15,052 bases of DNA from Ginkgo biloba. Taxonomy: Eukaryota > Plantae > Ginkgophyta. The stretch lies in contig JANKJI020000004.1 of assembly GCA_024626585.2 (NCBI GenBank), forward strand, positions 22,431,426-22,446,477, written 5' to 3'. Both the position numbers and the translations under genes were made by a program. The notes under the pieces were generated by a model that had not been told where the DNA came from, did no database searches, and saw only the letters and a list, made by a program, of their open reading frames with translations. Each line of letters opens with the position of its first letter. Positions within the stretch are counted from its first letter, which is position 1. Positions 1 to 15,052 of this stretch are shown here, in pieces.

Positions 1-256
1 CTAATCCTAAAGGAATTAATCTTACATTAATTTGGTAAGGCGACCTTGGGGCCTTACAAAAGCCTTAAGGAATCATAAAAGAGTTTAAGCAACTCTAGAG
101 GGGTCTTGTGTTAGCCTTATGGGGTTTTAAGTCAATTCCAAGTGACCATAGATCCTAAGAATCATATGACCTAAGCCTATTACCTTGAAAATGTGCAAGG
201 AAGTTGTTGAGTCACAATAATTCCTACTTGGTCATAATCATCACTTATACATCACA
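1..256. mobile_element. Possible terminal part of an LTR
   Basis: Tract with recurring ccttaag/gcctta/gacct words ending in ACATCACA at 256, a common TGTGATG...CATCACA LTR terminus. No partner terminus in the window. Confidence 0.25.
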
Positions 257-980
257 AATATTGGCTGCACATGTAGAGATGTGAACTTAGGATGACCTTC
301 AAGAAGAGCAAAACATTTCTCTCGAGGAAAGACAGTTAGCCTAAAATAAAGGAATAGTTGGAAGCAATCAACTCAAGATTGAATTTTGAACAAAAATACT
401 CCTCAAAGGAACCATCAATGCATGGGGGATGCTAATTGGTTTTTGAAGAAAGAGAAAAAACAATAGCCCAAATATAGAGAGGAAGGTCAACCTAGAGAAA
501 TTTTAGCAAGTGCAAAGGTTGAATTCCAATCTCAGATCTATAGATTGTGTTTATGGAGCAAATCACTAAAGGGATCACAAATGTCACATTTAAGAGGGTT
601 TTATGCCTGTAAAAGTACATTTGAAGCAAGATGCTGACTTAGCAGGTGTCTTGAAATTAATATAAACAATTTTTTGCAGTAGATTCAGGATATACACCAA
701 ATATACTATAGAAAGTGAACTACTTTGTGGTATCTAACAATTAGGAGTTGCAGATACCCTTCTTTTATGCTCAGAAGAACCTGTTGTCAAGTCACCCTAT
801 GAGTTGGAGCCCTCTTGAACCAAATTGCAATATAGACATTGAGTATGGTTCGTAACACGTTGCTGTCTAGTAATATTGTGTATGTAGAAAATAAGAATAA
901 TTGAGTTTCAGAGGACTTAGGGTTTTCTCTAGGACACTTCTCCAATGAAAGAGTGGGTTTTTGACATACCATTCAAAGGA

Positions 981-1024
981 ATACTTCTGCCCTAATCTTG
1001 TTGTATGTATACTTCTGCCCTAAT
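981..1024. repeat. 16-bp direct repeat ATACTTCTGCCCTAAT, 28-nt period
   Basis: Exact copies at 981-996 and 1009-1024. Confidence 0.9.
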
Positions 1025-2697
1025 TTTATGTGAATATACGTATAGCTGAAAACTTACAAAATTTTGTGTTTGTTGGTAAATCATTCTTAAGTTGAATTTA
1101 TGTGCCCCAGAATAGGGTTGAATGTCTATACGTGTATGGCATATATGGCTTTTGTTGAAATGAGAGAGACCGTAGTTTTCTCATAGTTACATGGTTGAAA
1201 ATGCATTAAATGAGAATTGTACCTTGTTGATTTATTATTGAAACTCTCATTAAGCTACCCTAGAAACATGATCCTACTTGTTTTAGAGTTTATAGGGGAA
1301 TAGTGATGAGGAATTGTAGCGCCATTGAGGGAATTGAGGTTTAAACTCAGGCGTATGAATGATACATTTTCATATTAATAAAATATGTAATCGATGCATT
1401 TTGAATTAGTGCAAATAAATAAATGTTAGTCATAGAAGGCTAGTTGGCTCCTAGTGCTTGTGTAGATGATAAGCCCAAGCCTTTAAGGGTTGACGATGGA
1501 AAATCTCGTATCCATATTTGGCCTTAGGAACATGCAAATATACGTGGGAAATNNNNNNNNNNNNNNNNNNNNNNNNNNNNNNNNNNNNNNNNNNNNNNNN
1601 NNNNNNNNNNNNNNNNNNNNNNNNNNNNNNNNNNNNNNNNNNNNNNNNNNNNTACTAGTCTGAGTGAAGCTCTTAAATCTGATTTTATGTTGTATCCATT
1701 GTTTTTTGTTGTTTTTAGATTTTTATTGGTTTTTATCTTTTTCAAATTTTTATGGATTTTTGGTATTGGTTTTCACTAGACCAATACCAATACTGCAACA
1801 CATTTGTACAAGCATATCTACACTCAAATCTAATCGTAATGCCAGTTTTAAGTGGCTGACATTAACCGGTGTGGGTAACAACTGGCCGCCAAATTGCTTC
1901 AAATTTACCGAACCATTACTATTAATTTTGTCAATGAGAAACGGGCCAAGCCTGGTCCTGAATTTGCTATTGTACAGGAGAAATTTATGTCCTTTATGGA
2001 AGGTGGGTGACCTTATGTGTCAGTCTTTCCATGCTTTCTGCCATTAACAGATTTTATAGCTAGTCTCCAATTTTCCTTTTTATGTTGGTGACAGTTCAAT
2101 TGATTACTACCAGTTTGATATTTGTTATTGGGTTAGTGAGAAAAATGTCATAGAAAAATGCTTGCAGAATTTGTGCTTGAAAAATTAGCCAAATACACAA
2201 GTATACTAAAGAATTCATGGCATTCAAGTATTTTTGAAGATACAAAAGTAAAAAAAAAACAATATCCAGAACATCAAAGTGAGCACAGGTTTGTGTAATA
2301 GTCTGAAACAAGAGTTTCACATAGTATGTGGTTGTGTAGCTTGTAATTTAGTTCATTAGAACCTATTTGCTTATTATAATTCTTTTCAACTGTAGATTTT
2401 GGGTTTCCCATCTTCCATACATTTTTAAACACACATTAAGATGCTAAAACATTAAAGAATTCAAGTTTAATGCAAGGATTATCATAGCTTTTGATGATTT
2501 TGGTTCTAACTTCTAGTGCTTCTCAATAGAGCATTAGTGGGATGTTTTTCCTGTTCCTTGTTTTATAATGTTTGGATTAGAAGTTTGGGCTTTTGGGCTT
2601 TTCTGAAATAGCATCTGTTGGAGATTTCATAACTGGTGCAGTTTGAAGCAGAAAACTGAATTTTCCTGAACATTTTTATGCCTACTAATTTCTACAG

Positions 2698-2754
2698 ATG
2701 ACTGCTCAGAGGATCTGCATAATACTTTCTTTCTTGTTCTGATAAGTCTCTTTG
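2698..2754 (+). other. Putative small upstream exon of the nucleoporin gene (5'UTR or coding)
   Basis: Branch-like CTAAT plus TTCTACAG acceptor (AG 2696-2697). Donor TG|GTAAGC at 2755 is followed by a 79-nt AT-rich intron ending TTTCTTTATGATAG at 2833. Confidence 0.55.
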
Positions 2755-2833
2755 GTAAGCTTTCACATGCAAAATTCTTGTCTGTATAAGAGCATTATAT
2801 TAGTGCTTATGTCAATCCGTTTCTTTATGATAG

Positions 2834-2980
2834 GTGTTGCTGCTGCATCAACATCAGCAACTGTATATACAAAGTATAACGAAATTTTGCTTTGCTGAAG
2901 CTACTCCCTCCAGTGCAACTCAAGTGGTCTTTTCTGCTACAGCTGGTGCAGCAATTGTTGTGCAGGTGCTATCATTTGAG
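2834..2980 (+). other. Putative second upstream exon (3' boundary uncertain)
   Basis: Acceptor at 2832-2833; GC-richer Ala/Ser/Thr-type codons; candidate donors at 2874 (AA|GTATAA), 2966 (AG|GTGCTA) and 2981 (AG|GTAGAC). Confidence 0.4.
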
Positions 2981-3112
2981 GTAGACTTACATATCCTACA
3001 TCTTTTAGGATACATTCTGTGGAAAAGAATAGCTCCTATGAATATCCACAGTAAAATTATCTTGCTTTACCATAATGAATAACTATGAGAACTTTTTTTT
3101 TGTTTCCAACAG

Positions 3113-4515
3113 AATCACTGCAGCATCACCAATTACCTCAATGTCCGGGGCATCCTCTCCAGCGACAGGATCAGCCATGTTTGGCACACCAGCATCCTCT
3201 CCCCTTCCCTTTGCATCTCAGCCTACAGTCTCATCTTTATTTTCTTCATCGTCAGCAACAGCTCCACAGACAACATCCGGGTTCTCTTTCAGTGGTGCCT
3301 CGATGCCACAATCATCAGCGTTTGCTTCCCCGGCCTTTAATTTCAAACCACCCTCATCGTCTGCTACAACTGCCACCGCCACTGCGACTACTACTGCATT
3401 TACTGGTTTCTCCTTTGGTTCATCTTTAACTGCTGCCTCCACTCCTGCATCTTCAAACTCAGGTTTAACATTTGCAACACCTGTGTCTTCAGCTTCTGTC
3501 TCGGGTTCACCGTTTGGATCCACAACTGTTTCTCCACTTCCAACCCGTCCTTTATCTTTTGGCACCCCTTTGTCCACACCACCATCAACAAGTTTATCTT
3601 TTGGTGCCTCTGCATCAACACCAGCTTCATCTTTTGGAGCCTTTGCATCATCAGCTTCTACCCCTGGTTTGTCCTTTGGAACACCTGCTTCTTCACCTTC
3701 AATGCCCAGTCTGTCTTTTGGTGCTCCAGTGTCTTCAGCTTCAACCCCGGGTTTGTTCTTTGGAACACCTGCATCAGCACCTTCAACCTCAGGTTTGTCA
3801 TTTGGAACTGCACAATCTTCACCTTCAACCCCGGGATTAACTTTTGGAACTCCAGCTTCTTCACCTTTCGGTGCCCTGTCATCCATGGGATCAGCGCCAA
3901 GTTTATCTTTTGGCGTCCCTGCATCAACACCAGCTTCGTCTATTGGCGCCCCCACATCCACAGCTTCTACCCCCAGTTTGTCCTTTGGAGCACCTGCTTC
4001 TTCAGCTTCAACACCCAGTCTGTCTTTCGGTGCTCCGGCATCTTCTGCTTCAACCCCAGGATTCTCCTTCGGAGGGGCCGCGTCAGCAACTTCAACCTCA
4101 GGTTTTTCTTTTGGAACCTCATCGTCTTCATCTTTTGGACCTGCGGCATCATCTTCAACCTCTGGTTTTTTGTTTGGAACGCTTTCATCAGCTACAGCTC
4201 AACCATCAGTTGGATTTGGAAATGTGGGCGCAGTTGGATCTACAACTGCAGGATCCTCACCACTTCCTTCTTTTTCCTTAGGGTTTGCTTCCTCTGCATC
4301 ATCTTCATCCTCAGTGGCTTCTGCAGGTACATCATTTCCTTCATTTGGGGTACCAGCATCATTATCCACTCCTGCAACACAGTCTACTGTCACTAGCTCC
4401 ACTTCTGCAGGATTGCCAGCTTTTGGGCAAACACCTTCATCGGGAACAACTCCTACATTTTCTTTATCAGTTAAACCATCTTCAACGTCATCAACAACTG
4501 CAACTCCTGCTCTCG
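3113..4515 (+). CDS. NUP62: Large FG-repeat exon of a nucleoporin, most similar to the N-terminal FG domain of plant NUP62; partial gene, with further exons expected beyond the window
   Basis: Lies within ORF 3075-4535. Acceptor TTTTTTTTTGTTTCCAACAG ends at 3112; strong donor G|GTGAGT at 4516 (phase 1). In-frame ATG at 3141 (MSGASSP...). About 22 FG motifs (LSFG, FSFG, SPFG, FLFG, PSFG) in S/T/A/P spacers, with no D/E and only 3 K/R. The MSG start and late FPSFGV segment resemble Arabidopsis NUP62 as I recall it. The diagnostic Nsp1_C coiled coil is not in the window, so FG-Nup is firm and NUP62 specifically is about 0.6. Confidence 0.8.
3556..4115 (+). repeat. Coding tandem repeat, about 42 bp / 14 aa unit (consensus approx. 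PASSASTPSLSFG[AT])
   Basis: Successive units such as tcagcttctacccctggtttgtcctttggaacacctgcttct, tcaccttcaatgcccagtctgtcttttggtgctccagtgtct and tcagcttcaaccccgggtttgttctttggaacacctgcatca; eight LSFG motifs. Confidence 0.9.
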
Positions 4516-5878
4516 GTGAGTACGTGCTTTTATAAAGGTCTTACAAATTTGGTACTTTTCCAAGAAGGCATTCTTGACAAAGTTTGAAAACTCTCACATT
4601 TATGACAAAATGGATATGCCCAATAGCATTTGCCAACTGGTCAAAGTATTTTGAGGGACCAATATCAATTCACATATAATGTAGACCATAATACCTTGGA
4701 TGTATATACCCTAAAATAGGGAACCTAAGCTTCTCTAACCTGGGGGAGCTATAGATTTCTATGCTTCCCATTCATAAGAGCATTCCTTTTGAAATATATG
4801 GGTTCTGGTTTTGCATCTGTGTTAGTGAATATAAGTTAGTGCTTGGTGCCTACCTTAACAAGACACACTATCCTCACGAGCATTAGTTTATTTTAATGTT
4901 TCAGTTCACTTTTGGGCAACCCAAGCTTGAAGTATTTTATGCGGTTCCAATGAACTGGAGGAACAGCATAAACGAGGGATGTAGCAATCAACTTTATAAG
5001 ATTTCACTCTAAGCAAAGTATTATGGATAAATAGAAGCTTCATGATATTTGGCAAACACTTTAATCATTGCCTCAAATCTTATTAGAAAATTGTGAATTA
5101 CTCAAAACTGTACCTTTCACCTTAATTTGTGCAAAATACCCAAGTGTATATTAAGTTACACTAGTACAAGCTCATGGTAACCTACCTCAGCAATATCTTG
5201 CCCTTGTGCATTCAACCACACCAAATATGCTTACACTCATATGAATCTATTATGCAAATAGAACACCCATGGACAGGCTGGAATTGATGGCAAAATTTGT
5301 TGTCAATTCGCTGGAGTTATTTCTATCAATACGACATGTTTTCCGTATTTGATGGGAAGAAAAATTGTGTGGCCTGACAATGTTAGTTGAGGGTAATGAT
5401 TCCTATCAATTGACATACACTTTCCCCTTGAGCACATTAGTTNNNNNNNNNNNNNNNNNNNNNNNNNNNNNNNNNNNNNCCTTGAAGGGAAATGTTCTTT
5501 TATATTTTTACATGGAATATATTAATGATATCAAAGTTTTGTATTTTTCATAATTTTCATATTACACTGTAGAGGAATTGTTCTTCCTAAAGTGGATTAT
5601 TTCCAAAGTTTTATATTTATTCACATCTTGATTGTATGTGTCTTTCTAATCTTTCTTTAAATTTTGAGCACTTTGATGGTGCATTGGCATTGAATGATGT
5701 GGAGGTTATGTTATGGGAGCAAATTGACTGTAGCTTTAGAGCATGAATGTAGGGAACCTAAGATAGGCCAAGAAGTCAAGAAGAGGCAAAGAACAAAGAT
5801 GAAGATGAATAATCAAGGAGGATAAGCTCAAGATTATGAAGAAGATTCAAAAAGGAAGATTATTGATTATCAATTTGG

Positions 5879-5901
5879 TATATATATATATATTTTTTTT
5901 T
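5879..5901. repeat. (TA)7 followed by a T-run
   Basis: Direct reading. Confidence 0.9.
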
Positions 5902-5923
5902 GTTGCAAATATATAAATATATA

Positions 5924-6870
5924 TTTATTTTTCTTTTATCTAGAATAGGCAAAATTACATTAGATTACAACAAAAAAATTGGGCAGCAAAAGGTGTACTC
6001 GCTCTTAGAAACCAGGGCATCATCACGAACATCGCGAACATCAACAAAGACACCCTAGAGGTGAGGTACTCTTCTTAGGGTTATAGTTAAACGTAGGAAT
6101 CACTTGTCACGCAGGGCATCGTCATGAGACAAAACCTATGACACACCCTAACTGAGAATAAAAAGCTTATGTTACCACGTAGGGCATGACAAGCTTTAAA
6201 CACAACACACCAAACCCTAAGCACAAGACAAAACAAACCTCCCGACTGCACTGAGGTTCAAAATGAGAGACTGATGGCGACTCCCTCCCACGAACACTGT
6301 GGACTTTTGATGAAGCTTGAACTGGCAGCTTATTGAAGCCTTGCACCCTGACCTCTATCGACTAAGGGGATCTCCATGGGACACCAAACTTTGAAATGAG
6401 CTACTTGCTGTGAGCATGCCATGAGCCCAGCGAATTGCGAACCTTGGCCACAAAAGATGAAACTGTTGAAAACAATAGACGGAGTTGTCTAGAAGCAAGA
6501 ATTGCCGAAGCATTGAACCACAAACCCTAGCCACCATGAGACAATGTGCATACACTGGCCGTCTCGCTTGCATGATGAACCAACCAACTTGGCCATTGAA
6601 AATTGCAAATAATCTGGACCTCCAATGAACCACGACTTGCCTGAACGAATCTAGAAACACCACTTCCTCCAAGCGATTTGCTAGAGGCGTCTTTCTCCAA
6701 GGCAGATACCTTCTTCCCCCTTGAGTTTTGCCAAGCTATTGCCTCCATTGATGAAAGAGTCGAATCCTAGCATGGTTAAGAGCAGGAGAGCGCTGCTATT
6801 GAGATGGAGAAGTGGTGCCTCTCACTAAACCCTAGTAGAGTTTGACATGAACTTTCAATAGCCTTCACTA
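5924..6870 (-). mobile_element. Probable 5'-truncated L1-type LINE (ORF2 C-terminal remnant, 3'UTR and A-rich tail)
   Basis: GC-richer island. Minus-strand ORF 6355-6672 contains HWRSRLFAIFNG, resembling the plant L1 ORF2 C-terminal W-x-x-R-N-x-x-I-F-x-G motif. The minus strand ends in GATAAAAGAAAAATAAA beside a (TA)n/T-run. No RT or CCHC motif is visible, and the 5' boundary is approximate. Confidence 0.45.
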
Positions 6871-7254
6871 TTGTCTTAGAAAATATCATTTGTTTTTGTT
6901 TTTATGTTCTATGAATACCGTGTCTTACAATTATTATATATTAGTTACTTGAACCCTTAATCAGTGCTAGGTTTATATCTTCCCGAAGGATTTAAACTCT
7001 CTTAGACTTGGTGAAAGTGATATTCATTTACCACTAATTTATGTTTTGGGGACATGTAAGTTAAGTAATGGTTGATGATTTCTAAGTGTTGCTTTTACAT
7101 TCAAAATAGACTTAAAATTTTTCATTATACAGAGGAAGGGAGGAATGCCATAAGCAACATATTATTGGCTATAGTTTAAGATGAGTGAATTATTAATTAT
7201 ATAGGCTAACTTCTTTTAAGCATATTCAGACAAGTGGAATTTATTGTTCAAAAG

Positions 7255-8226: not shown

Positions 8227-9176
8227 GACACAACGATGGGCTGTAACTAAACCTACTTGTAGCCAAGGGGTCTCCTAATGTCTCAAAGAGGTTGGATAGT
8301 TGTGAAGCCAACAATAATTAAGGAGACAAGAATGACAAGACAGATTTGGTGGACAAAGGAACATGAATCATTTGGAAAAAGGCAATTGCTTAACACAACT
8401 AGCTGCCAAAAAATATAACGATTCGTAAAGGGAGCAAACGAAAGAATGTTGAGGCATTGGAGAAAATGAAAGACACCTAGAAGTGGGTGCGCTATAATAT
8501 TGCTCACCTTTACAAAGAAATAATAGTGGAAAACCCGAATCCCACATAAATTAAAGAATCAATGAGCATAAAGGAAACAAGGGAACAAATGAGATGAGGT
8601 CAAACCTAACAAAGATGGAAAAAATATGACAAAGCCCCGACCACGACATAAAGGCAAGAGGAGACCCCCTAGTCTTTAAAATAAATACTACATTAATCAA
8701 AAAGAAATTCACAACTATTCACTCAAAGAAACTATCAAGTATCCTAGTAGAAAATATAACAAGTAATCATAGTTTACTAGAATAACTAGAATCTGATCAA
8801 TAGTTGTTGATAGTCACATTGGAATCACATACTCTGTTATACCTTGGGAAAATCCACTATATAGAACCATGGCAACCAATCCAACACTTGAGTCTCTAAA
8901 TTCTCATGAAGAATCACCTCAGGAGGCCATCCTGAGGATTTTTGTCCTAGACAACCAATGGGAGGAAGTAATCCCTTCGACCAAAGCCAACTAAGTAATA
9001 GTAACAGTAGCATCAGAGGTTATTGGCTCAATTTTGTTAATAATAATGCTAGTTTTCAAAATATGTTTTAAAATTAACAAAATAGCGGGTCGAGTACATT
9101 CAATGCCAACAATGGCAACCTGACTAACAATTGCAGTTTCAAATGACACTAGAACAATTCATTCTATTTTAATGTA

Positions 9177-9206
9177 AATAATAATAATAATAATAATAAT
9201 AATAAT
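9177..9206 (+). repeat. (AAT)10 microsatellite, in frame as poly-Asn in the N-rich gag leader
   Basis: Direct reading. Confidence 0.95.
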
Positions 9207-10001
9207 CATCTATCTCTCGGATATAACAATTTAATGAGTAATTGGAGTAGTAACCCCAATAACTAGAACAATACCTTTTGTGGCCCGACTAGCACATTCA
9301 AGAGTCAAATTAATACATTCGGCAAATGCAATAACATGACCAGTGGACAGCATAACCCCTTCATTAACTTCAATGGGCCAAATTTTAGTAGTGTCAAGCA
9401 ACAAAATCATGGAGGTTGCAACAACAGCAATGGGAGTAACGTCAATCTAAACAACCATACAACAATAGAAGTGACTTTAGTGGAGGTACACCTAAGAATG
9501 AATCGTTAAAGTGGTAATACAAGTTGGTAGATTATTAGTATCATACTTCTAAGAAATCATGCATNNNNNNNNNNNNNNNNNNNNNNNNNNNNNNNNNNNN
9601 NNNNNNNNNNNNNNNNNNNNNNNNNNNNNNNNNNNNNNNNNNNNNNNNNNNNNNNNNNNNNNNNCATAGCAAACAAAAGATTATACATGTATATATATAA
9701 AAATCCACCCAAGGAAACACCAACACTAGTAGTTTCATCAGTTGAACTTAAGAGACCAACACAAGGTCTCGAAGGAAGCAAAGCAACCTCTACAATGCGT
9801 CTAATACTAGCTACATTAACTAATGAAGAAAAGTTGGACGTTCGTAGGGAATTTATAGATGATTTAAACTAAAGCATTCCATTACACACTTTATTTTAAT
9901 GCTAGGAATCGAAACAACTGTAGAAGCTAAGTGACATTACTTAAGATAGAAAAATAGTTCCAGTTAGGTTTGTGCATCCTAAATTGGATAATGATACTCA
10001 C

Positions 10002-10370
10002 GTATCCATGCAATTGTTAGGTTATATTGTGGAAAAATCCATTATGGATGGCGATTTCGTTGTTAACATATTACTTGAGAATACACAGAAGCCAAATGGA
10101 AGTCCATCCATGATGCTAGAAAAGTACACTTTGACGATGGCATATTAATTACAAGTGTGACCTATGGGCATGATAGAATGTTCCTACAATTGTTGTTGGC
10201 ATGCTAGTACTACAAGAATTCCCAATCATAAGAATGCCGACTAAGGGTACATAGTATCTTGATTTACTTCGGCGAGAATGGTTGCATGAGACTGAGGCTT
10301 TGTAAGATTGGTGGCACTATACTATAACTGTAAGATAGGTGGGCAAGTTAGTGACCTTGCCAATGGTCAC
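10002..10370 (+). pseudogene. Retrotransposon aspartic protease remnant
   Basis: Manual translation: KSIMDGDFVVNILL (catalytic D at 10047; cf. DGGSxVNIL) ... YTLTMAY*LQV*PMG ... YLDLLRREWLHETEAL*DWW (cf. LLGRPWL...HDW). Confidence 0.85.
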
Positions 10371-10714
10371 AGACAGGCTAGCCTTCACAAAAATTAATGA
10401 GGACGCTTCAAACACCATAGTATCCTTCGAATGAACCATCGACTCCTATTCAAAATTTGCATATTATTGCATTACAAAAAACATTCACAAACGAGCCTAA
10501 CTTTTAAGGTGAAGTTGAGATAGTAGTAGTTCACATGATGAAGACTTTGCATGCTTTATGGTAAATTGGTTGCAAGAGGCCTACAAACTCAACCAATATG
10601 CATGTTATAGTATCAATAAACACTATGATATTTAAAAAGATAAAAAAAAAGGATTATAATTAATGACACTAGTGAGATTCAAACGAAGACAAAACCATTG
10701 ACACTAAAATTGTC

Positions 10715-11221
10715 ATGAAACCCCCAGATTCAAGCACATTTAACCTAGAAACTTAGAGTGGAGTTGCACACCCACAAATATGTGTGAAACAATGGGAAGA
10801 GGAAAAGTTTGAGTGGAAAGCATTATGGCATTTACAGTTTTCGCTAACCTTACAAGGTTATGAGCTTGATTGGTTTGTGCTCCACAAATATACACTACAA
10901 GGCTGGAGCGAGTTGTGAGATATTCATTGCTATATTTGGGGTCGGCAATTCTTCCAACTTACCTCAATGTAACATCAATCTCAAGCGTGAGGACCATGTA
11001 AAGAAATGCAAGAAGTTATGGAAACAAAATAGTACTCCATGTCAGCTATGGATATATCTATTCTCGAGTTCATCACCACCTCACTAGTTGGACTAGTACT
11101 AGCAATATGAGAAACAAAGAAATCTAATTGGAATTCATGTGTAAAGAGATTTAATTCCACCTTTCCTTGTAAGTCTGATGTACCAATTATAAACATAATT
11201 TTGAAAAAGATTAATAATTAT
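10715..11221 (+). pseudogene. Two tandem degenerate Gag-capsid-like (Retrotrans_gag type) domains between protease and RT
   Basis: Unit 1: T*SGVAHPQICVKQWEEEKFEWKALWHLQFSLTLQGYELDWFVLHKYTLQGWSEL/CEIFIAIFG. Unit 2: EDHVKKCKKLWKQNSTPCQLWIYLFSSSSPPH*LD*Y*QYEKQR/KSNWNSCVKRFNSTF. Both follow the F-x-x-T/S-L-x-G-x-A-x-x-W-F/Y...W-x-x-L-x3-F-x3-F pattern; unit 2 fits more loosely. Confidence 0.65.
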
Positions 11222-11410
11222 CAACAAATGAGAAAAGAATATCATTAAAACTTCTTTTAACCTTGAATCCACATCGATCACTATTAAAGATGTGCAACAA
11301 CTCTTACTCTTCGAATGTCCATTACATGAAGAACCTCAAGAGGCTGAAGAAGACAAAAAAAAAAAAAAAATGAAGATTGTACAACAATACATCACTAGAA
11401 GCTAAACACA

Positions 11411-12062
11411 CTAGAAGTAAATATTGGTATGAACATAGAGCTAAAGAAGATTATTATGGGTGATTATTGGGACAAAGTGACTATCGCCAAAGCTACAACA
11501 CTATTATCCAAATACCGCCGTATCTGCACGGTCGCATAAGTATTTGAAATAATAGGTGAAGGTTGAATTAGATAAAATGTTGGACATCGGATATATTTAT
11601 CTAGTTGAAAACAGTGAATGGATGAGCTCAGTAGTCATTGCTAAGANNNNNNNNNNNNNNNNNNNNNNNTTATCCAGAAATAAATAAGGTTATAAAGAAA
11701 GACCCTTTCTTGATATTGTTCACCAAGGACATGCTTTATTAACTGGCGAGGCACAAAGTATTCTCATTTATTGATGCCCTTGGTGGTTATAATTAGGTTA
11801 GTATCACCCTAAAAGATCACAAAATGATGTTTGCAACTGAATGGGGTACATGCGCTTATTGTGTTATGCCATTTAGGTCAACCAACATGCTTGGAACATT
11901 TCAACATGTGATCATGCAATTTTTTCACAACACAACCAAAAGGAAGGTAGATGTATTCTTTTATGACTGGACGTTTTTAGAGTGTTGGATAGTCACCTTG
12001 ACCACTTGAAAGGGATGTTAGAGATTTTCTAGAAAAGTAATTAGTGCCTCAATCTAGAAATC
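11411..12062 (+). pseudogene. Ty3/gypsy reverse transcriptase remnant
   Basis: LEVNIG...IMGDYWD; VKVELDKMLDIGYIYLVENSEWMSSVV; NKVIKKDPFL; FSFIDALGGYN*V; FATEWGTCAYCVMPFRSTN; VDVFFYDWTF (catalytic xxDD motif mutated to FFYD). Confidence 0.95.
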
Positions 12063-12071
12063 GTCTCAAAC

Positions 12072-13800
12072 TATGATGCCAACCAAGTTCATAAGAACTT
12101 TTTCTTAGTTCACATGGGTTGATCCTTAGATTAGTCTGCCATTGTTAATGTGAAGTGGGCAGGTGATAGAGTTAGCCTCCCAATGGCTTCCCATGTGCTT
12201 TCTGGTATAACATTCACTATAGAGCCACCATCCACGATTGCCTCTTTATCTCATGCTAGTCGCTCATCATAGACACTTAAGGATCAAGGGCAAGGTTTGG
12301 TTTAATTTACCATGCCGCTTTATCATTTTGATTCTTGCCCTTGCATGCTAGTGAATGTCATAAACTTGGCTCCCATAGCTCCAATATTTTTGTAAGAGGT
12401 ACCGTCAAGTTTAGGTCCTCCACAAGTACTATCAATAACTTCATCTTCTCACTTTGATGAAAGTGGTCCAGGTTCATATTCCCTATTGTTTTTAGGTGGT
12501 TGCAATGTAGTGTCGCTCTGTTCAATAATGGCCTCGTTAGGTTGTTTTCAAATTGACACCTTTATAACACTACAATTTTGCTTATTGCGGTTAATTTCTT
12601 CTTAAGCTTTTTCATGTCGAAGTCGTTCAAGCTCCTCTTTTGCCTTTTTTGTAGCTTCCTTCTTTGCTTGCGCTTCTTTGGCACCTGTGTTGAGTGCTTC
12701 TTTGGTAGCAACAAATCTATCTTTCTCCTTTTCAGATTCAAAAAAATTGTGTCTGCTTGTTTTGTGTTCATCTTCTTTCTTGATCAAGTGTAGAGGTTTA
12801 CATGGTAATTGTCTTGGTTGTTTGGGGTGTGATTGAATATATTGGAAGGTTTATCACTCCTTGTGTAGCCCTTGGTTTTGTGATCACCAAGGCCACATTG
12901 CATACAAATTGCTCCTTTATATTCCTTATGAGGATAGTTTTTAGCATCATACCCCCAGTTCATACAACAAGGACAACGTGTTGAAGGAATATTGCACTAG
13001 TTGGATTATTGAGCTTATTCTATGGGAGGGAATGGCATTGCTTTGTGTCATGTGTATCTTTGTTACATATGTGACACCACTTAGTTTTCACTTTCTCGTC
13101 TTGTTCAACTGTCTTTTTAGTTTGATTATAATTGGTGCCTCGCTTATTTAATTGGATTTTCATCTTCTTGATTTTGTCGGTCAATTTCTCAGTGATTTAT
13201 GCTTTGGGTGTTTTCTTAGGATCACCCTTGTTCATGTTCCAACATGCTAGATCTCTACCTACATAATATTTTTGATCAAGGTCGATTTTAGTTTTGACCA
13301 GAGTTTCAGATTCAAATGCTAGATTGCAAACTTGCTCATATGACTTCATTGGATGGAGTTAGATTTTCTCATAGTTGTGGGCAACAATTCGTTGATGAAA
13401 TACTTCAAAAGGCAACCGAAGGTACTATGTTGTTCCNNNNNNNNNNNNNNNNNNNNNNNNNNNNNNNNNNNNNNNNNNNNNNNNNNNNNNNNNNNNNNNN
13501 NNNNNNNNNNNNNNNNNNNNNNNNNNNNNNNNNNNNNNNNNNNNNNNNNNNNNNNNNNNNNNNTGAAAGTAATCAAGGAATTGCTTCTTGCATGGGTTAG
13601 GACTTCTCCTTGATGCATGCATACCATTGTAGTGCGATTCTACAAAGTGTTGAGAAGAGTCTTTGTTTAATCGTAGTTTCATTCTTGATCCCTTGTTGTG
13701 CTATGTTGTTCAAAAATAGGGCCAAGTGCTGAGATGGATCTCTATAACCTTAATACTTGAGGTGTTGAAGTGAGGTGTCAAGAAATTGGAATACGTTTGG
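12072..13800 (-). mobile_element. Inverted fragment of a second gypsy element: gag capsid, two zinc knuckles, charged linker, N-terminal half of protease
   Basis: Minus strand: KY*GYRDPSQHLALF...RLFSTLCRIALQWY...FLDYF (13564-13800); intact CX2CX4HX4C CHICNKDTHDTKQC (13035-13076); second knuckle CMQCGLGDHKTKGY (12865-12906, last C changed to Y); AIVDGGSIVNVIPESTWEAIG...FTLTMAD (DGGS at 12221-12232). Confidence 0.92.
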
Positions 13801-13901: not shown

Positions 13902-14430
13902 TTTTATCCTGTGCAAAATGACTCACAAAGGTAAAGACATAGCCAATATTTTGATTTCAAAAGTCTACTAAATTTGGTCTTCCTAAGAACATTGTGAGCG
14001 ATCAGGATTCAAAGTTTACTAGTCAAGTATTAATCGAATTATTACGTACTTTGGGGACTAGATTAAATTTTAGTAGTGGTGATCATCCTCAAACTGATGG
14101 ACAGACAGAGTGAGGCAATCGGATTATGGAGGATATGTTGAGGTCTCATGTGGCCACTAGATAGACTAGTTGGGAAGAGAGGCTTCCTTTTGTGGAATTT
14201 GCATATTGCAACAAAAAGCATTCGGCTATAGTTATGGCACCTTTTAAAGCCACGCATGGCGATGAACCCTTAATTCTAATGGAATTTGATTTAAATAATT
14301 TTAAAGGGAAACCACAAGTTTTCCTCGAGATGCTTGAATAAATGAAGGAAGAATTAAGGGAATGCCAAAGGAATATTGAAAGAGCACAAGCACTTGCTAG
14401 ATTGTATGCAGATCACATAGATCATGTTTT
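13902..14430 (+). pseudogene. Integrase catalytic core remnant of a chromovirus-type Ty3/gypsy element
   Basis: FGLPKNIVSDQDSKFTS...LGTRLNFSSGDHPQTDGQTE*GNRIMEDMLR...WEERLPFVEFAY. D at 14000 and E at 14108 give D-x35-E spacing. SDRDxKF and HPQTDGQTE are typical chromovirus-branch wording. Confidence 0.9.
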
Positions 14431-14519: not shown

Positions 14520-15052
14520 TCTGATGGGGTGTTCATGATGATTTCCTAGATGCTAAATTCTTCAAGGTCATGGTAGTTACCATTTGGTATCTATGCATCA
14601 CTTAGTACTTGTTAACAAAGACATTTTCAAATGACATATCAATAGCAAAAAGATGGGAAACAAAAAAGGAAATAAGACCTTTCTGATCGATTGGCAGCAT
14701 TTTTACAAAATGGGACATGAGTTGATGCTTCATTGGAGCATTATGCCCAAGGAAGTGAGCAAAGCGTTGAAGGAAGCTCATACAAGAGTGGCATGGGGTC
14801 ATGTACGACTATAGAAGGAATGGCAAGAAAAGTCATGTTTGTAGGACTATGGTGGTTTTGAAGTAATCTTGGGTGTCCATCAATAATTGTGATGCTTTTC
14901 AACACACGTGCAATAGATTAAGAGAGTTTTTATGCCTCGACATCTGGCATTGCCTCAGGAATTTTTCAGGCATGCAGACTGAATTGGGTTGGTTCTTTCA
15001 AGCTTCCCTTCTTGACTATTCATACACCATTATGAATATATGACAAATTGGA
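14520..15052 (+). pseudogene. Integrase N-terminal (H2C2 zinc-binding) region remnant of a non-chromovirus gypsy element
   Basis: GVHDDFLDAKFF...WY...YL; FYKMG; LKEAHTRVAWGH (H 14779, H 14800); ARKVMFVGLWW; NNCDAFQ (cf. CDxCQ); LNWVG (cf. LDFVG); YMTNW (cf. DYxTKW). Confidence 0.88.

What the first reader, a model, noticed from the sequence alone, without database searches (positions are those of the whole stretch)
10715..11221. Two extra Gag-capsid-like domains embedded inside pol, between protease and RT
Seen: about 1 kb of gap-free sequence separates the protease from RT on the same strand. It decodes, with a few stops and two frameshifts (near 10914 and 11120), to two tandem units with the Retrotrans_gag signature. 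Unit 1 (SGVAHP...W...QFSLTLQGYELDWF...GWSEL..IFIAIF) aligns by eye with the genuine capsid of the inverted element (GYRDPSQH...LFSTLCRIALQWY...FLDYF). Established: canonical gypsy order is GAG-PR-RT-RH-INT, with capsid only upstream of PR. Inference: this lineage carries duplicated capsid modules within Pol, which could tether Pol into particles, alter capsid geometry, or act as a self-restriction factor like the Gag-derived p22 of yeast Ty1. No LTR, zinc knuckle or target-site signature flanks the units, arguing against a nested insertion. I recall a similar pre-RT segment in gymnosperm gypsy elements but cannot verify whether it has been described.
Basis: partly seen in the sequence, partly recalled or inferred. 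Interest (0 to 1): 0.8.

Follow-up and report, generated by a model that had tools for sequence, protein, structure and literature searches.

The report
Capsid-like module directly before reverse transcriptase
A decayed plant jumping gene (a Ty3/gypsy retrotransposon) carries a capsid-like (gag-like) coding piece directly in front of its reverse transcriptase, where a protease normally sits; related copies show this is a real family trait, but only this window shows the protease lying upstream of it.

Summary
The segment is real and is not a one-off insertion. Window 10748-11066 (+) is homologous to a gag-like (Retrotrans_gag-type) coding module. In three independent relatives (cDNA contigs L003, L004, L001) that module sits at the same distance upstream of RT. 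No zinc knuckle or protease lies between module and RT, and the module has evolved under purifying selection.

It matches the protease of the inverted element and a profile built from intact relatives.

Three points are not supported:
- The "two domains" look like one capsid-type domain. The second unit is not significant in the window.
- The by-eye match to the inverted element's capsid is no better than chance.
- No capsid fold could be shown, because the models had low confidence.

Whether protease, module and RT belong to one polyprotein is seen only in this window, with a featureless 370-bp spacer between protease and module. I put PR-capsid-like-RT at about 0.5. The rival is a gag-RT deletion lineage lying next to an unrelated protease fragment.

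Eighty more distant relatives have the ordinary gag-knuckle-PR-spacer-RT order, with a spacer of very variable length. TatI/TatII elements are known to hold an extra RNase H in that slot.

Verdict: partly supported; a new variant of a known kind.

The parts
9828..9884 (+). Motif just upstream of the protease, weak
   Evidence: Collinear with window 12450-12394 (-) of the inverted element, with the same 203-204 nt spacing to the protease match. E 1.2 on its own.
10002..10374 (+). Aspartic protease of Athila/Tat type, decayed (stops and frameshifts)
   Evidence: tblastx against the inverted element's protease: E 1.9e-5, 36% identity over 45 aa. Polyprotein profile of 10 intact relatives: 10002-10178 matches model 664-722 (iE 0.0033) and 10189-10374 matches 727-787 (iE 0.0091). 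The protease spans model positions 664-758.
10375..10747 (+). Spacer between protease and gag-like module. No open frame and no detectable homology. A possible junction of two fragments would lie here.
   Evidence: Stop-free pieces of only 26-40 codons, as expected by chance. L003 1-325 against this region is not significant. No profile hit.
10748..10918 (+). Gag-like module, N-terminal part (frame 2), ending in GWSEL. A frameshift follows at about 10916.
   Evidence: tblastx L003 326-481 matches 10760-10915. Profile from L003 and L004 only: iE 1.4e-4. The homologous L003 stretch maps to canonical gag.
10917..11066 (+). Gag-like module, middle part (frame 0). A frameshift follows at about 11061-11063.
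   Evidence: L003 572-631 matches 11004-11063, and L004 390-497 matches 10956-11063. Profile hits iE 0.0098 and 0.002.
11063..11245 (+). Not statistically supported in the window.
   Evidence: Position is collinear with unit 2 of L003, L004 and L001. The four-row alignment has an invariant W and F. A unit-2 profile finds nothing here.
11246..11371 (+). A-rich spacer (Lys/Glu codons) before RT
   Evidence: Translation. L003 has an equivalent Glu/Lys-rich stretch at 860-900.
11372..11524 (+). Conserved stretch just N-terminal of the RT domain (called RT-pre in the report)
   Evidence: tblastx with L001 1104-1250, L003 997-1113 and L005 7-174.
11553..12059 (+). Reverse transcriptase, N-terminal half. 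Assembly gap at 11647-11669. Truncated at about 12060.
   Evidence: tblastn of 80 database hits. Polyprotein profile iE 1e-6 and 2e-24. The big search found 80 proteins, best 56 bits.
12061..12295 (-). Protease (N-terminal part) of the inverted element. It abuts the + strand RT.
   Evidence: tblastn P0012 and P0029, E 2e-5. Athila protease profile iE 1.4e-4. Polyprotein profile iE 1.2e-8.
12790..13760 (-).
   Evidence: Read by eye from the translation. Pfam finds nothing on its pieces. No significant similarity to the gag-like module.

Best explanation
Window 10748-11245 is the decayed copy of a capsid-type (Retrotrans_gag-like) coding module. It belongs to one family of Athila/Tat-like (OTA) Ty3/gypsy retrotransposons. 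In that family the module is fused directly in front of RT, with no zinc knuckle or protease between.

The most likely layout of the original element is one polyprotein: protease, spacer, capsid-like module, short spacer, RT, RNase H, integrase. On this reading a stretch of gag sequence (the end of the gag N-terminal region plus the capsid core) was copied into the protease-RT spacer. That spacer varies greatly in length in this lineage, and in TatI/TatII elements it holds an extra RNase H.

Shown: the module exists, is gag-like, is conserved, and was kept under protein-level selection. A genuine protease lies upstream in this window.

Inferred: protease and module were one reading frame. A capsid-like piece attached to RT co-assembles with Gag, so that the polymerase is carried into particles after the protease has cut. 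The copy in this window is dead, with stops, frameshifts and truncation in RT.
For: 1. Family trait. L003 is collinear with the window from 10760 through RT at a constant offset (10434, 10432, 10411). L004 and L001 share parts of the module next to RT.
2. Independent profile. A model built from L003 and L004 alone finds 10748-10918 (iE 1.4e-4) and 10974-11066 (iE 0.002) as the best hits in the window.
3. Selection. L003 against L004 in the module: 47% aa identity over 70 gap-free codons, pN 0.36 against a saturated pS of 0.76.
4. Gag-like nature. Pfam PF03732 is the only hit for L003 395-637 (E 0.039), and it also hits L003 673-978 (E 0.11). A profile of intact relatives places L003 218-502 on canonical gag positions 83-176 (iE 0.004). 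hhalign gives E 0.0023. MAFFT lines the piece up along the whole canonical domain.
5. No protease or knuckle lies between module and RT in the window, L003 or L001.
6. The protease at 10002-10374 is real and of the same lineage type as the RT. It runs 29 profile positions into the canonical spacer and then stops about 370 bp before the module. A chance neighbour would have to be broken exactly there.
7. The protease-RT spacer ranges from about 100 to about 400 aa in 80 relatives. An extra domain in that slot is known for TatI/TatII (PMC6317226; PMC13468544).
Against: - No second copy shows a protease upstream of the module. L003 and L004 end 325 and 290 bp upstream of it.
- The 370-bp spacer at 10375-10747 has no open frame and no detectable similarity to L003 1-325 or to the canonical spacer.
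- The window is a mosaic of broken gypsy pieces in both orientations, so chance neighbours are common.
- None of 80 more distant relatives, nor the closest ones with 8 kb upstream (L076, L077), carries the module.
- No canonical gag was demonstrated upstream of this protease.
- All gag-likeness scores are below curated thresholds. The structure models were poor.
Confidence: 0.5

Rival explanations
1. Two unrelated fragments lie side by side. The module is simply the ordinary (and only) gag of a family that lost its zinc knuckle and protease by an internal deletion, giving gag-RT-RNase H-integrase. That family is mobilised with a protease supplied in trans. The protease at 10002-10374 belongs to another Athila/Tat-like element, broken in its spacer.
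For: - The window is a patchwork: an inverted gag-PR fragment abutting RT at 12060, integrase pieces out of order, and N gaps.
- The spacer at 10375-10747 carries no coding signal and no homology.
- L003's match to canonical gag starts in the gag N-terminal region (model position 83), and its frame stays open upstream, as a true gag N-terminus would.
- L004 shows that this family does suffer internal deletions: the module is fused to RT motif C.
Against: - A lineage without a protease would have to persist long enough for RT and module to diverge to about 50% aa identity under purifying selection.
- The neighbouring protease has the same orientation and lineage type, and it is broken inside the 140-aa spacer. 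My rough estimate is a few percent for this by chance.
- The stretch just before RT in L003 still matches the end of the canonical protease-RT spacer, model 906-948. That fits an insertion into the spacer as well as it fits a deletion.
Confidence: 0.3
2. The protease truly precedes the module, but there is no other gag. The family has a rearranged order, PR-gag-RT, rather than an extra capsid domain.
For: No canonical gag could be detected upstream of the protease in the window. No family copy reaches that far.
Against: - The profile also failed to detect the inverted element's obvious gag, so the blank is weak.
- All intact relatives, and the inverted element whose protease is homologous, carry gag and zinc knuckles upstream of the protease.
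Confidence: 0.1
3. The segment is the extra RNase H (aRH) that TatI/TatII elements carry between protease and RT, or some other non-capsid helical filler. The gag resemblance is spurious.
For: - aRH in that slot is described for club-moss and gymnosperm Tat elements (PMC6317226).
- All gag scores are sub-threshold.
- No capsid fold was recovered.
Against: - No RNase H family appears for any piece at E up to 10.
- Three different methods each point to the same part of gag: Pfam, hhalign against relatives' gag, and the polyprotein profile.
- The models are all-helical, unlike RNase H.
Confidence: 0.05
4. Chance: the reader saw patterns in AT-rich non-coding DNA.
For: - Both strands of the region have stop-free runs of 70-80 codons.
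- Pfam and PDB sequence searches on the window's own pieces find nothing.
- The word search finds nothing.
Against: There is collinear homology to L003 and L004 with independent profile support and a selection signal.
Confidence: 0.03

Closest known systems
TatI / TatII Ty3/gypsy elements with an extra RNase H (aRH) between protease and RT (Ustyantsev et al.; Neumann et al. 2019, PMC6317226; PMC13468544)
   Same: Both are non-chromovirus OTA-type elements of non-flowering plants. Both have an additional protein module in the protease-RT slot, with the rest of Pol ordinary.
   Different: The module here is gag-like, not RNase H. No aRH was detected. That the module sits in the slot rests on this one window.
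Canonical Gag capsid domain (Pfam PF03732 Retrotrans_gag) of Athila/Tat-like elements, as in intact relatives L016, L019, L022 and L075
   Same: It shares the core motif pattern (F..tL.G.A..WY ... W/F..L...F..rF ... F[LI].GL) and aligns along the whole domain.
   Different: It scores below the Pfam threshold. It is not followed by a CCHC knuckle or a protease. It lies directly before RT instead of at the N-terminus of the polyprotein.
Ogre elements: an intron between the gag-pro and RT-RH-INT reading frames (PMC6317226)
   Same: Both have an unusually long, stop-containing stretch between protease and RT in an OTA element.
   Different: The Ogre stretch is a non-coding intron of about 270 bp. 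Here the stretch holds a conserved coding module under selection in relatives.
Ty1 p22/p18, a Gag-derived self-restriction factor (PMC4551931; cited from the title and abstract returned)
   Same: Both are capsid-derived polypeptides in addition to full-length Gag within one element, so the idea is comparable.
   Different: p22 is an N-terminally truncated product of the same gag gene, made from an internal transcript. It is not a second coding module inside Pol. Nothing here tests restriction.
Non-autonomous LTR retrotransposons with internal deletions (my own knowledge, not tested here)
   Same: Gag is fused to downstream Pol domains after loss of intervening domains. L004 shows such a deletion in this family.
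   Different: Deletion derivatives are usually young and not kept under long-term selection across diverged subfamilies.

Membership tests
Ty3/gypsy, non-chromovirus OTA (Athila/Tat-like) | RT of the Athila/Tat type | tested here: met
   The best database hits are Athila-type proteins. The polyprotein profile of relatives scores iE 2e-24 on 11671-11970. Relative L001 carries RNase H, H2C2 and an integrase core after RT.
Ty3/gypsy, non-chromovirus OTA (Athila/Tat-like) | Domain order GAG-PROT-RT-RH-INT | tested here: not met
   A gag-like module, and no protease, lies directly before RT in the window, L003 and L001. Intact, more distant relatives do have the canonical order.
Ty3/gypsy, non-chromovirus OTA (Athila/Tat-like) | LTRs, primer-binding site, target-site duplication | tested here: not met
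   There are no long direct repeats in the window. No tRNA-Met primer-binding site lies near the element. The copy is truncated, so this says little.
Tat clade (TatI/TatII layout) | [quoted passage not shown] | tested here: not met
   No RNase H family is hit by any piece of the window or of L003/L004 at E up to 10.
Retrotrans_gag (PF03732) capsid domain | Score at or above the Pfam gathering threshold (24.1 bits) | tested here: not met
   Scores are 14.6 bits (E 0.039) and 13.2 bits (E 0.11) on L003 pieces. There is nothing on window pieces. The pieces are cut by stops. A read-through with X had no reference and was left out.
Retrotrans_gag (PF03732) capsid domain | Profile-level homology to bona fide gag of related elements | tested here: met
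   The match is weak but consistent: polyprotein profile iE 0.0041, 0.026 and 0.022, hhalign E 0.0023, and full-length collinear alignment.
Retrotrans_gag (PF03732) capsid domain | Capsid (Ty3/Arc-like helical lobe) fold | tested here: inconclusive
   AlphaFold2 models had pLDDT 48.9 and 52.8 and were all-helical. Foldseek against the PDB gave no match below E 9.8.
Complete retrotransposon Gag | CCHC zinc knuckle after the capsid domain | tested here: not met
   There is no knuckle between the module and RT in the window, L003, L004 or L001. Relatives L016 and L019 have zf-CCHC.
Gag-derived self-restriction factor (Ty1 p22-like) | Separate expression of a capsid fragment that poisons particle assembly | not testable with these tools
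   Only cDNA contigs of unknown 5' completeness are available.

The most novel reading that the evidence does not exclude
A family of Athila/Tat-like Ty3/gypsy elements, found in the window's plant host and with kin in cDNA from another plant, encodes a second capsid-derived domain inside Pol. The domain is fused to the N-terminus of RT downstream of the protease and is kept by purifying selection. It may act as a built-in tether that carries RT into particles, or as a modulator of assembly.
Probability: 0.45. Interest if true: 0.7.

Novelty: new variant of a known kind. Interest (0 to 1): 0.55.

Why it matters
The gag-PR-RT-RH-INT order of LTR retrotransposons is treated as fixed. Reference sets such as REXdb removed elements with repeated or misplaced domains as artefacts (PMC6317226), so a family like this would have been filtered out.

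The protease-RT spacer is already known to accept an extra RNase H in TatI/TatII elements. A capsid-like domain retained by selection in that slot would show that the spacer accepts other modules. It would also give a natural case for testing how Pol is recruited into particles in single-frame elements.

If the rival is right, the family is still of some interest. It would be a protease-less gag-RT lineage that stayed under selection.

In either case the copy in this window is a dead fragment with no function of its own.

Tried and rejected
1. Pfam on 40 or so stop-free window pieces, both strands, found nothing. Even the RT piece was missed, so piecewise Pfam is uninformative here.
2. Word searches with the 79-aa window piece and with alignment A1 gave no candidates in the allowed length range.
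3. PDB sequence searches with both pieces and with profile A1 found nothing relevant.
4. Two AlphaFold2 runs and a Foldseek search gave low confidence and no match.
5. Profiles and an intact RH-INT protein from L006 did not support it. The protease reading was then confirmed.
6. L003's N-terminal frame against the Athila protease-RT spacer gave tblastn E 0.12 without composition correction, but a profile of that spacer finds nothing. This is inconclusive.
7. Scans of metagenome and viral contigs with the module alignment found no relatives.
8. L053 has a 400-aa protease-RT spacer in an intact frame, but it is not homologous to the module and has no Pfam hit.
9. DNA for the Taxus chinensis relative (P0081) could not be fetched because the file is too large. 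An unnamed 174-aa gene lies about where a protease would be.
10. An exact look-up of an L003 product in other samples returned only the same contig.
11. An inversion model joining the inverted gag-PR fragment to the module-RT fragment was rejected, because no RT C-terminal half lies on the minus strand left of 10700.
12. Not done: a read-through of the window's broken frames, with X at the breaks, submitted to Pfam or AlphaFold. There is no reference for such a string, so the step was left out. No repaired or consensus frame was built.

Full report
**What the window is.** The 15-kb window is AT-rich eukaryotic (plant-like) DNA with eight N runs. It is not human-like. It holds an FG-repeat ORF and a patchwork of broken Ty3/gypsy pieces on both strands. 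No LTR pair, tRNA gene or Rfam family was found.

**RT and its relatives.**
- The + strand RT is certain. Eighty database proteins match the 70-aa piece 11797-12006, best 56 bits. They map by tblastn to 11556-12059.
- The named hits are Athila-type proteins of Tanacetum.
- The closest unnamed hit, P0015, lies on cDNA contig L001.
- A word search from P0015 led to a Taxus chinensis protein and to contigs L003 and L004, and later L005.
- L001 and L005 begin with a SMART-type cDNA adapter, so these contigs are transcripts.

**The observation.**
- L003 is collinear with the window far upstream of RT:
  - L003 326-481 matches window 10760-10915.
  - L003 572-631 matches 11004-11063.
  - L003 997-1113 matches 11408-11524, and RT follows.
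  - The offset is almost constant (10434, 10432, 10411).
- L004 303-497 matches 10871-11063. L001 keeps the last part of the module next to RT.
- At DNA level, L003 326-700 against window 10760-11150 scores 216. The null is 123 +/- 21, with 0 of 200 shuffles reaching the observed score.
- A profile built from L003 and L004 alone finds window 10748-10918 (iE 1.4e-4) and 10974-11066 (iE 0.002). These are the two best hits in all six frames, and they are in the right order.
- The frames switch at about 10916 and about 11061-11063. An in-frame stop lies at 11108-11110.
It aligns only weakly.

**What the module is.**
- In the better preserved L003, the only Pfam family hitting piece 395-637 is Retrotrans_gag. 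The score is E 0.039 and 14.6 bits, covering profile positions 3-44.
- Piece 673-978 also hits Retrotrans_gag, at E 0.11 and profile positions 26-58. Both scores are below the 24.1-bit threshold.
- A metagenome scan with the conserved pre-RT stretch (RT-pre) returned 80 relatives. Several of them have intact frames of 1000-2500 aa.
- Pfam shows that these intact relatives run Retrotrans_gag, CCHC knuckle, protease, RT, RNase H, integrase.
- A profile of ten such polyproteins gave these placements:
  - L003 218-502 on canonical gag positions 83-176 (iE 0.0041).
  - L003 610-747 on positions 138-183 (iE 0.026).
  - L004 423-626 on positions 118-186 (iE 0.022).
- hhalign of the module alignment against the relatives' gag alignment gives E 0.0023, over the motif F..tL.G.A..WY ... 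L...F...F.
I therefore read it as one capsid-type domain, possibly with a weak internal echo, rather than two domains.
- It is not RNase H. No such family appears, and the models are all-helical.
The models had pLDDT 48.9 and 52.8, and Foldseek found nothing.

**Selection.**
- Between L003 and L004 the module is 47% identical over 70 gap-free codons, with pN 0.36 against a saturated pS of 0.76.
- The second-unit stretch gives pN 0.31 against pS 0.76.
- The pre-RT stretch of L003 against L005 gives pN 0.17 against pS 0.84.
- The module was therefore a working protein-coding part of diverging lineages. It is not debris.

**The protease.**
- The protease was then confirmed. Window 10032-10217 (+) matches the inverted element at 12247-12061 (-) with E 1.9e-5. 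The upstream motif 9828-9884 is collinear with 12450-12394.
- The inverted copy matches Athila proteases: tblastn 2e-5, profile iE 1.4e-4 and 1.2e-8.
- The polyprotein profile places window 10002-10178 and 10189-10374 on positions 664-787. That is the protease plus the first 29 positions of the spacer.

**Is it one element?**
- No protease or knuckle lies between module and RT in the window, L003 or L001, and the spacing is the same in all three.
- A lineage that diverged under selection needs a protease somewhere.
- The window shows one of the right type, on the same strand, ending about 370 bp before the module.
- For a chance neighbour, that fragment would have to be broken inside its 140-aa spacer.
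- In the 80 relatives the protease-RT spacer ranges from about 100 to about 400 aa. TatI/TatII elements hold an extra RNase H there (PMC6317226, PMC13468544). The slot therefore tolerates insertions.
- Against one element:
  - L003 and L004 end just short of where the protease would be.
  - The spacer 10375-10747 has no open frame and no detectable homology.
  - None of the 80 relatives has the module.
  - The window is a mosaic. The + strand RT and the inverted protease abut at about 12060, and the integrase pieces are out of order.
- I put the one-polyprotein reading at about 0.5 and the deletion-lineage-plus-neighbour reading at about 0.3.

**Novelty.**
- My literature searches found no description of a gag-like domain before RT.
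- The REXdb survey states that elements with unexpected domain order or repeated domains were removed.
- These searches cover only the held library.

**Limits and rules kept.**
- I built no repaired, consensus or ancestral version of the element. Broken frames were read through only with X inside scripts, for searching.
- The X-joined read-through of the window could not be given to Pfam or AlphaFold, because it has no reference, so it was left out.

Noticed in passing
window 3075-4535 (+): A 486-aa ORF made of 42-nt repeats encoding FG/SFG motifs. Pfam Nucleoporin_FG scores E 0.002, below threshold. GC is about 48% against about 33% around it. It is probably an exon of an FG-nucleoporin-like host gene.
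   Followed up: partly
window 12061-13760 (-): An inverted Athila/Tat-like fragment with gag, two CCHC-type knuckles and the N-terminal part of a protease. It meets the truncated + strand RT head-on at about 12060.
   Followed up: partly
window 10146-10148 (+) and about 12139-12141 (-): Both protease copies have a stop at the same codon, right after the shared TLTMA[Y/D] motif. The likely cause is independent CGA-to-TGA decay at a CpG.
   Followed up: no
window 13967-14290 (+), 14528-14855 (+), 2040-1846 (-): The integrase core lies before an integrase N-terminal/H2C2 part on the same strand, so these are separate fragments. A further integrase C-terminal piece lies on the minus strand near 2 kb.
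   Followed up: partly
window 9078-9506 (+): An Asn-rich low-complexity stretch including (AAT)10 at 9177-9206, upstream of the protease. It resembles the N/Q-rich stretch after the knuckle in Athila proteins such as P0080. The resemblance is by eye only.
   Followed up: no
L001 1-26 and L005 1-24: Both Logan contigs start with a SMART-type cDNA adapter (translated WYQRRVL). The family is therefore transcribed in the sampled plant.
   Followed up: partly
L053 (JAEIGA010020144.1) 2-7150: An intact 2383-aa frame with a 400-aa protease-RT spacer. The spacer has no Pfam hit and no similarity to the module. A second protease follows the integrase (residues 2011-2100).
   Followed up: partly
L004 546-698: In this copy the module is fused directly to RT motif C (...KILGEKVAVFLDDW). 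This is an internal deletion of about 870 bp relative to the window and L003.
   Followed up: partly
Taxus chinensis GCA_019776745.2, locus of P0081 (no DNA held): An unnamed 174-aa gene lies 1.2-1.75 kb upstream of the RT gene. That is about where the window's protease lies relative to its RT. Its sequence could not be fetched.
   Followed up: no
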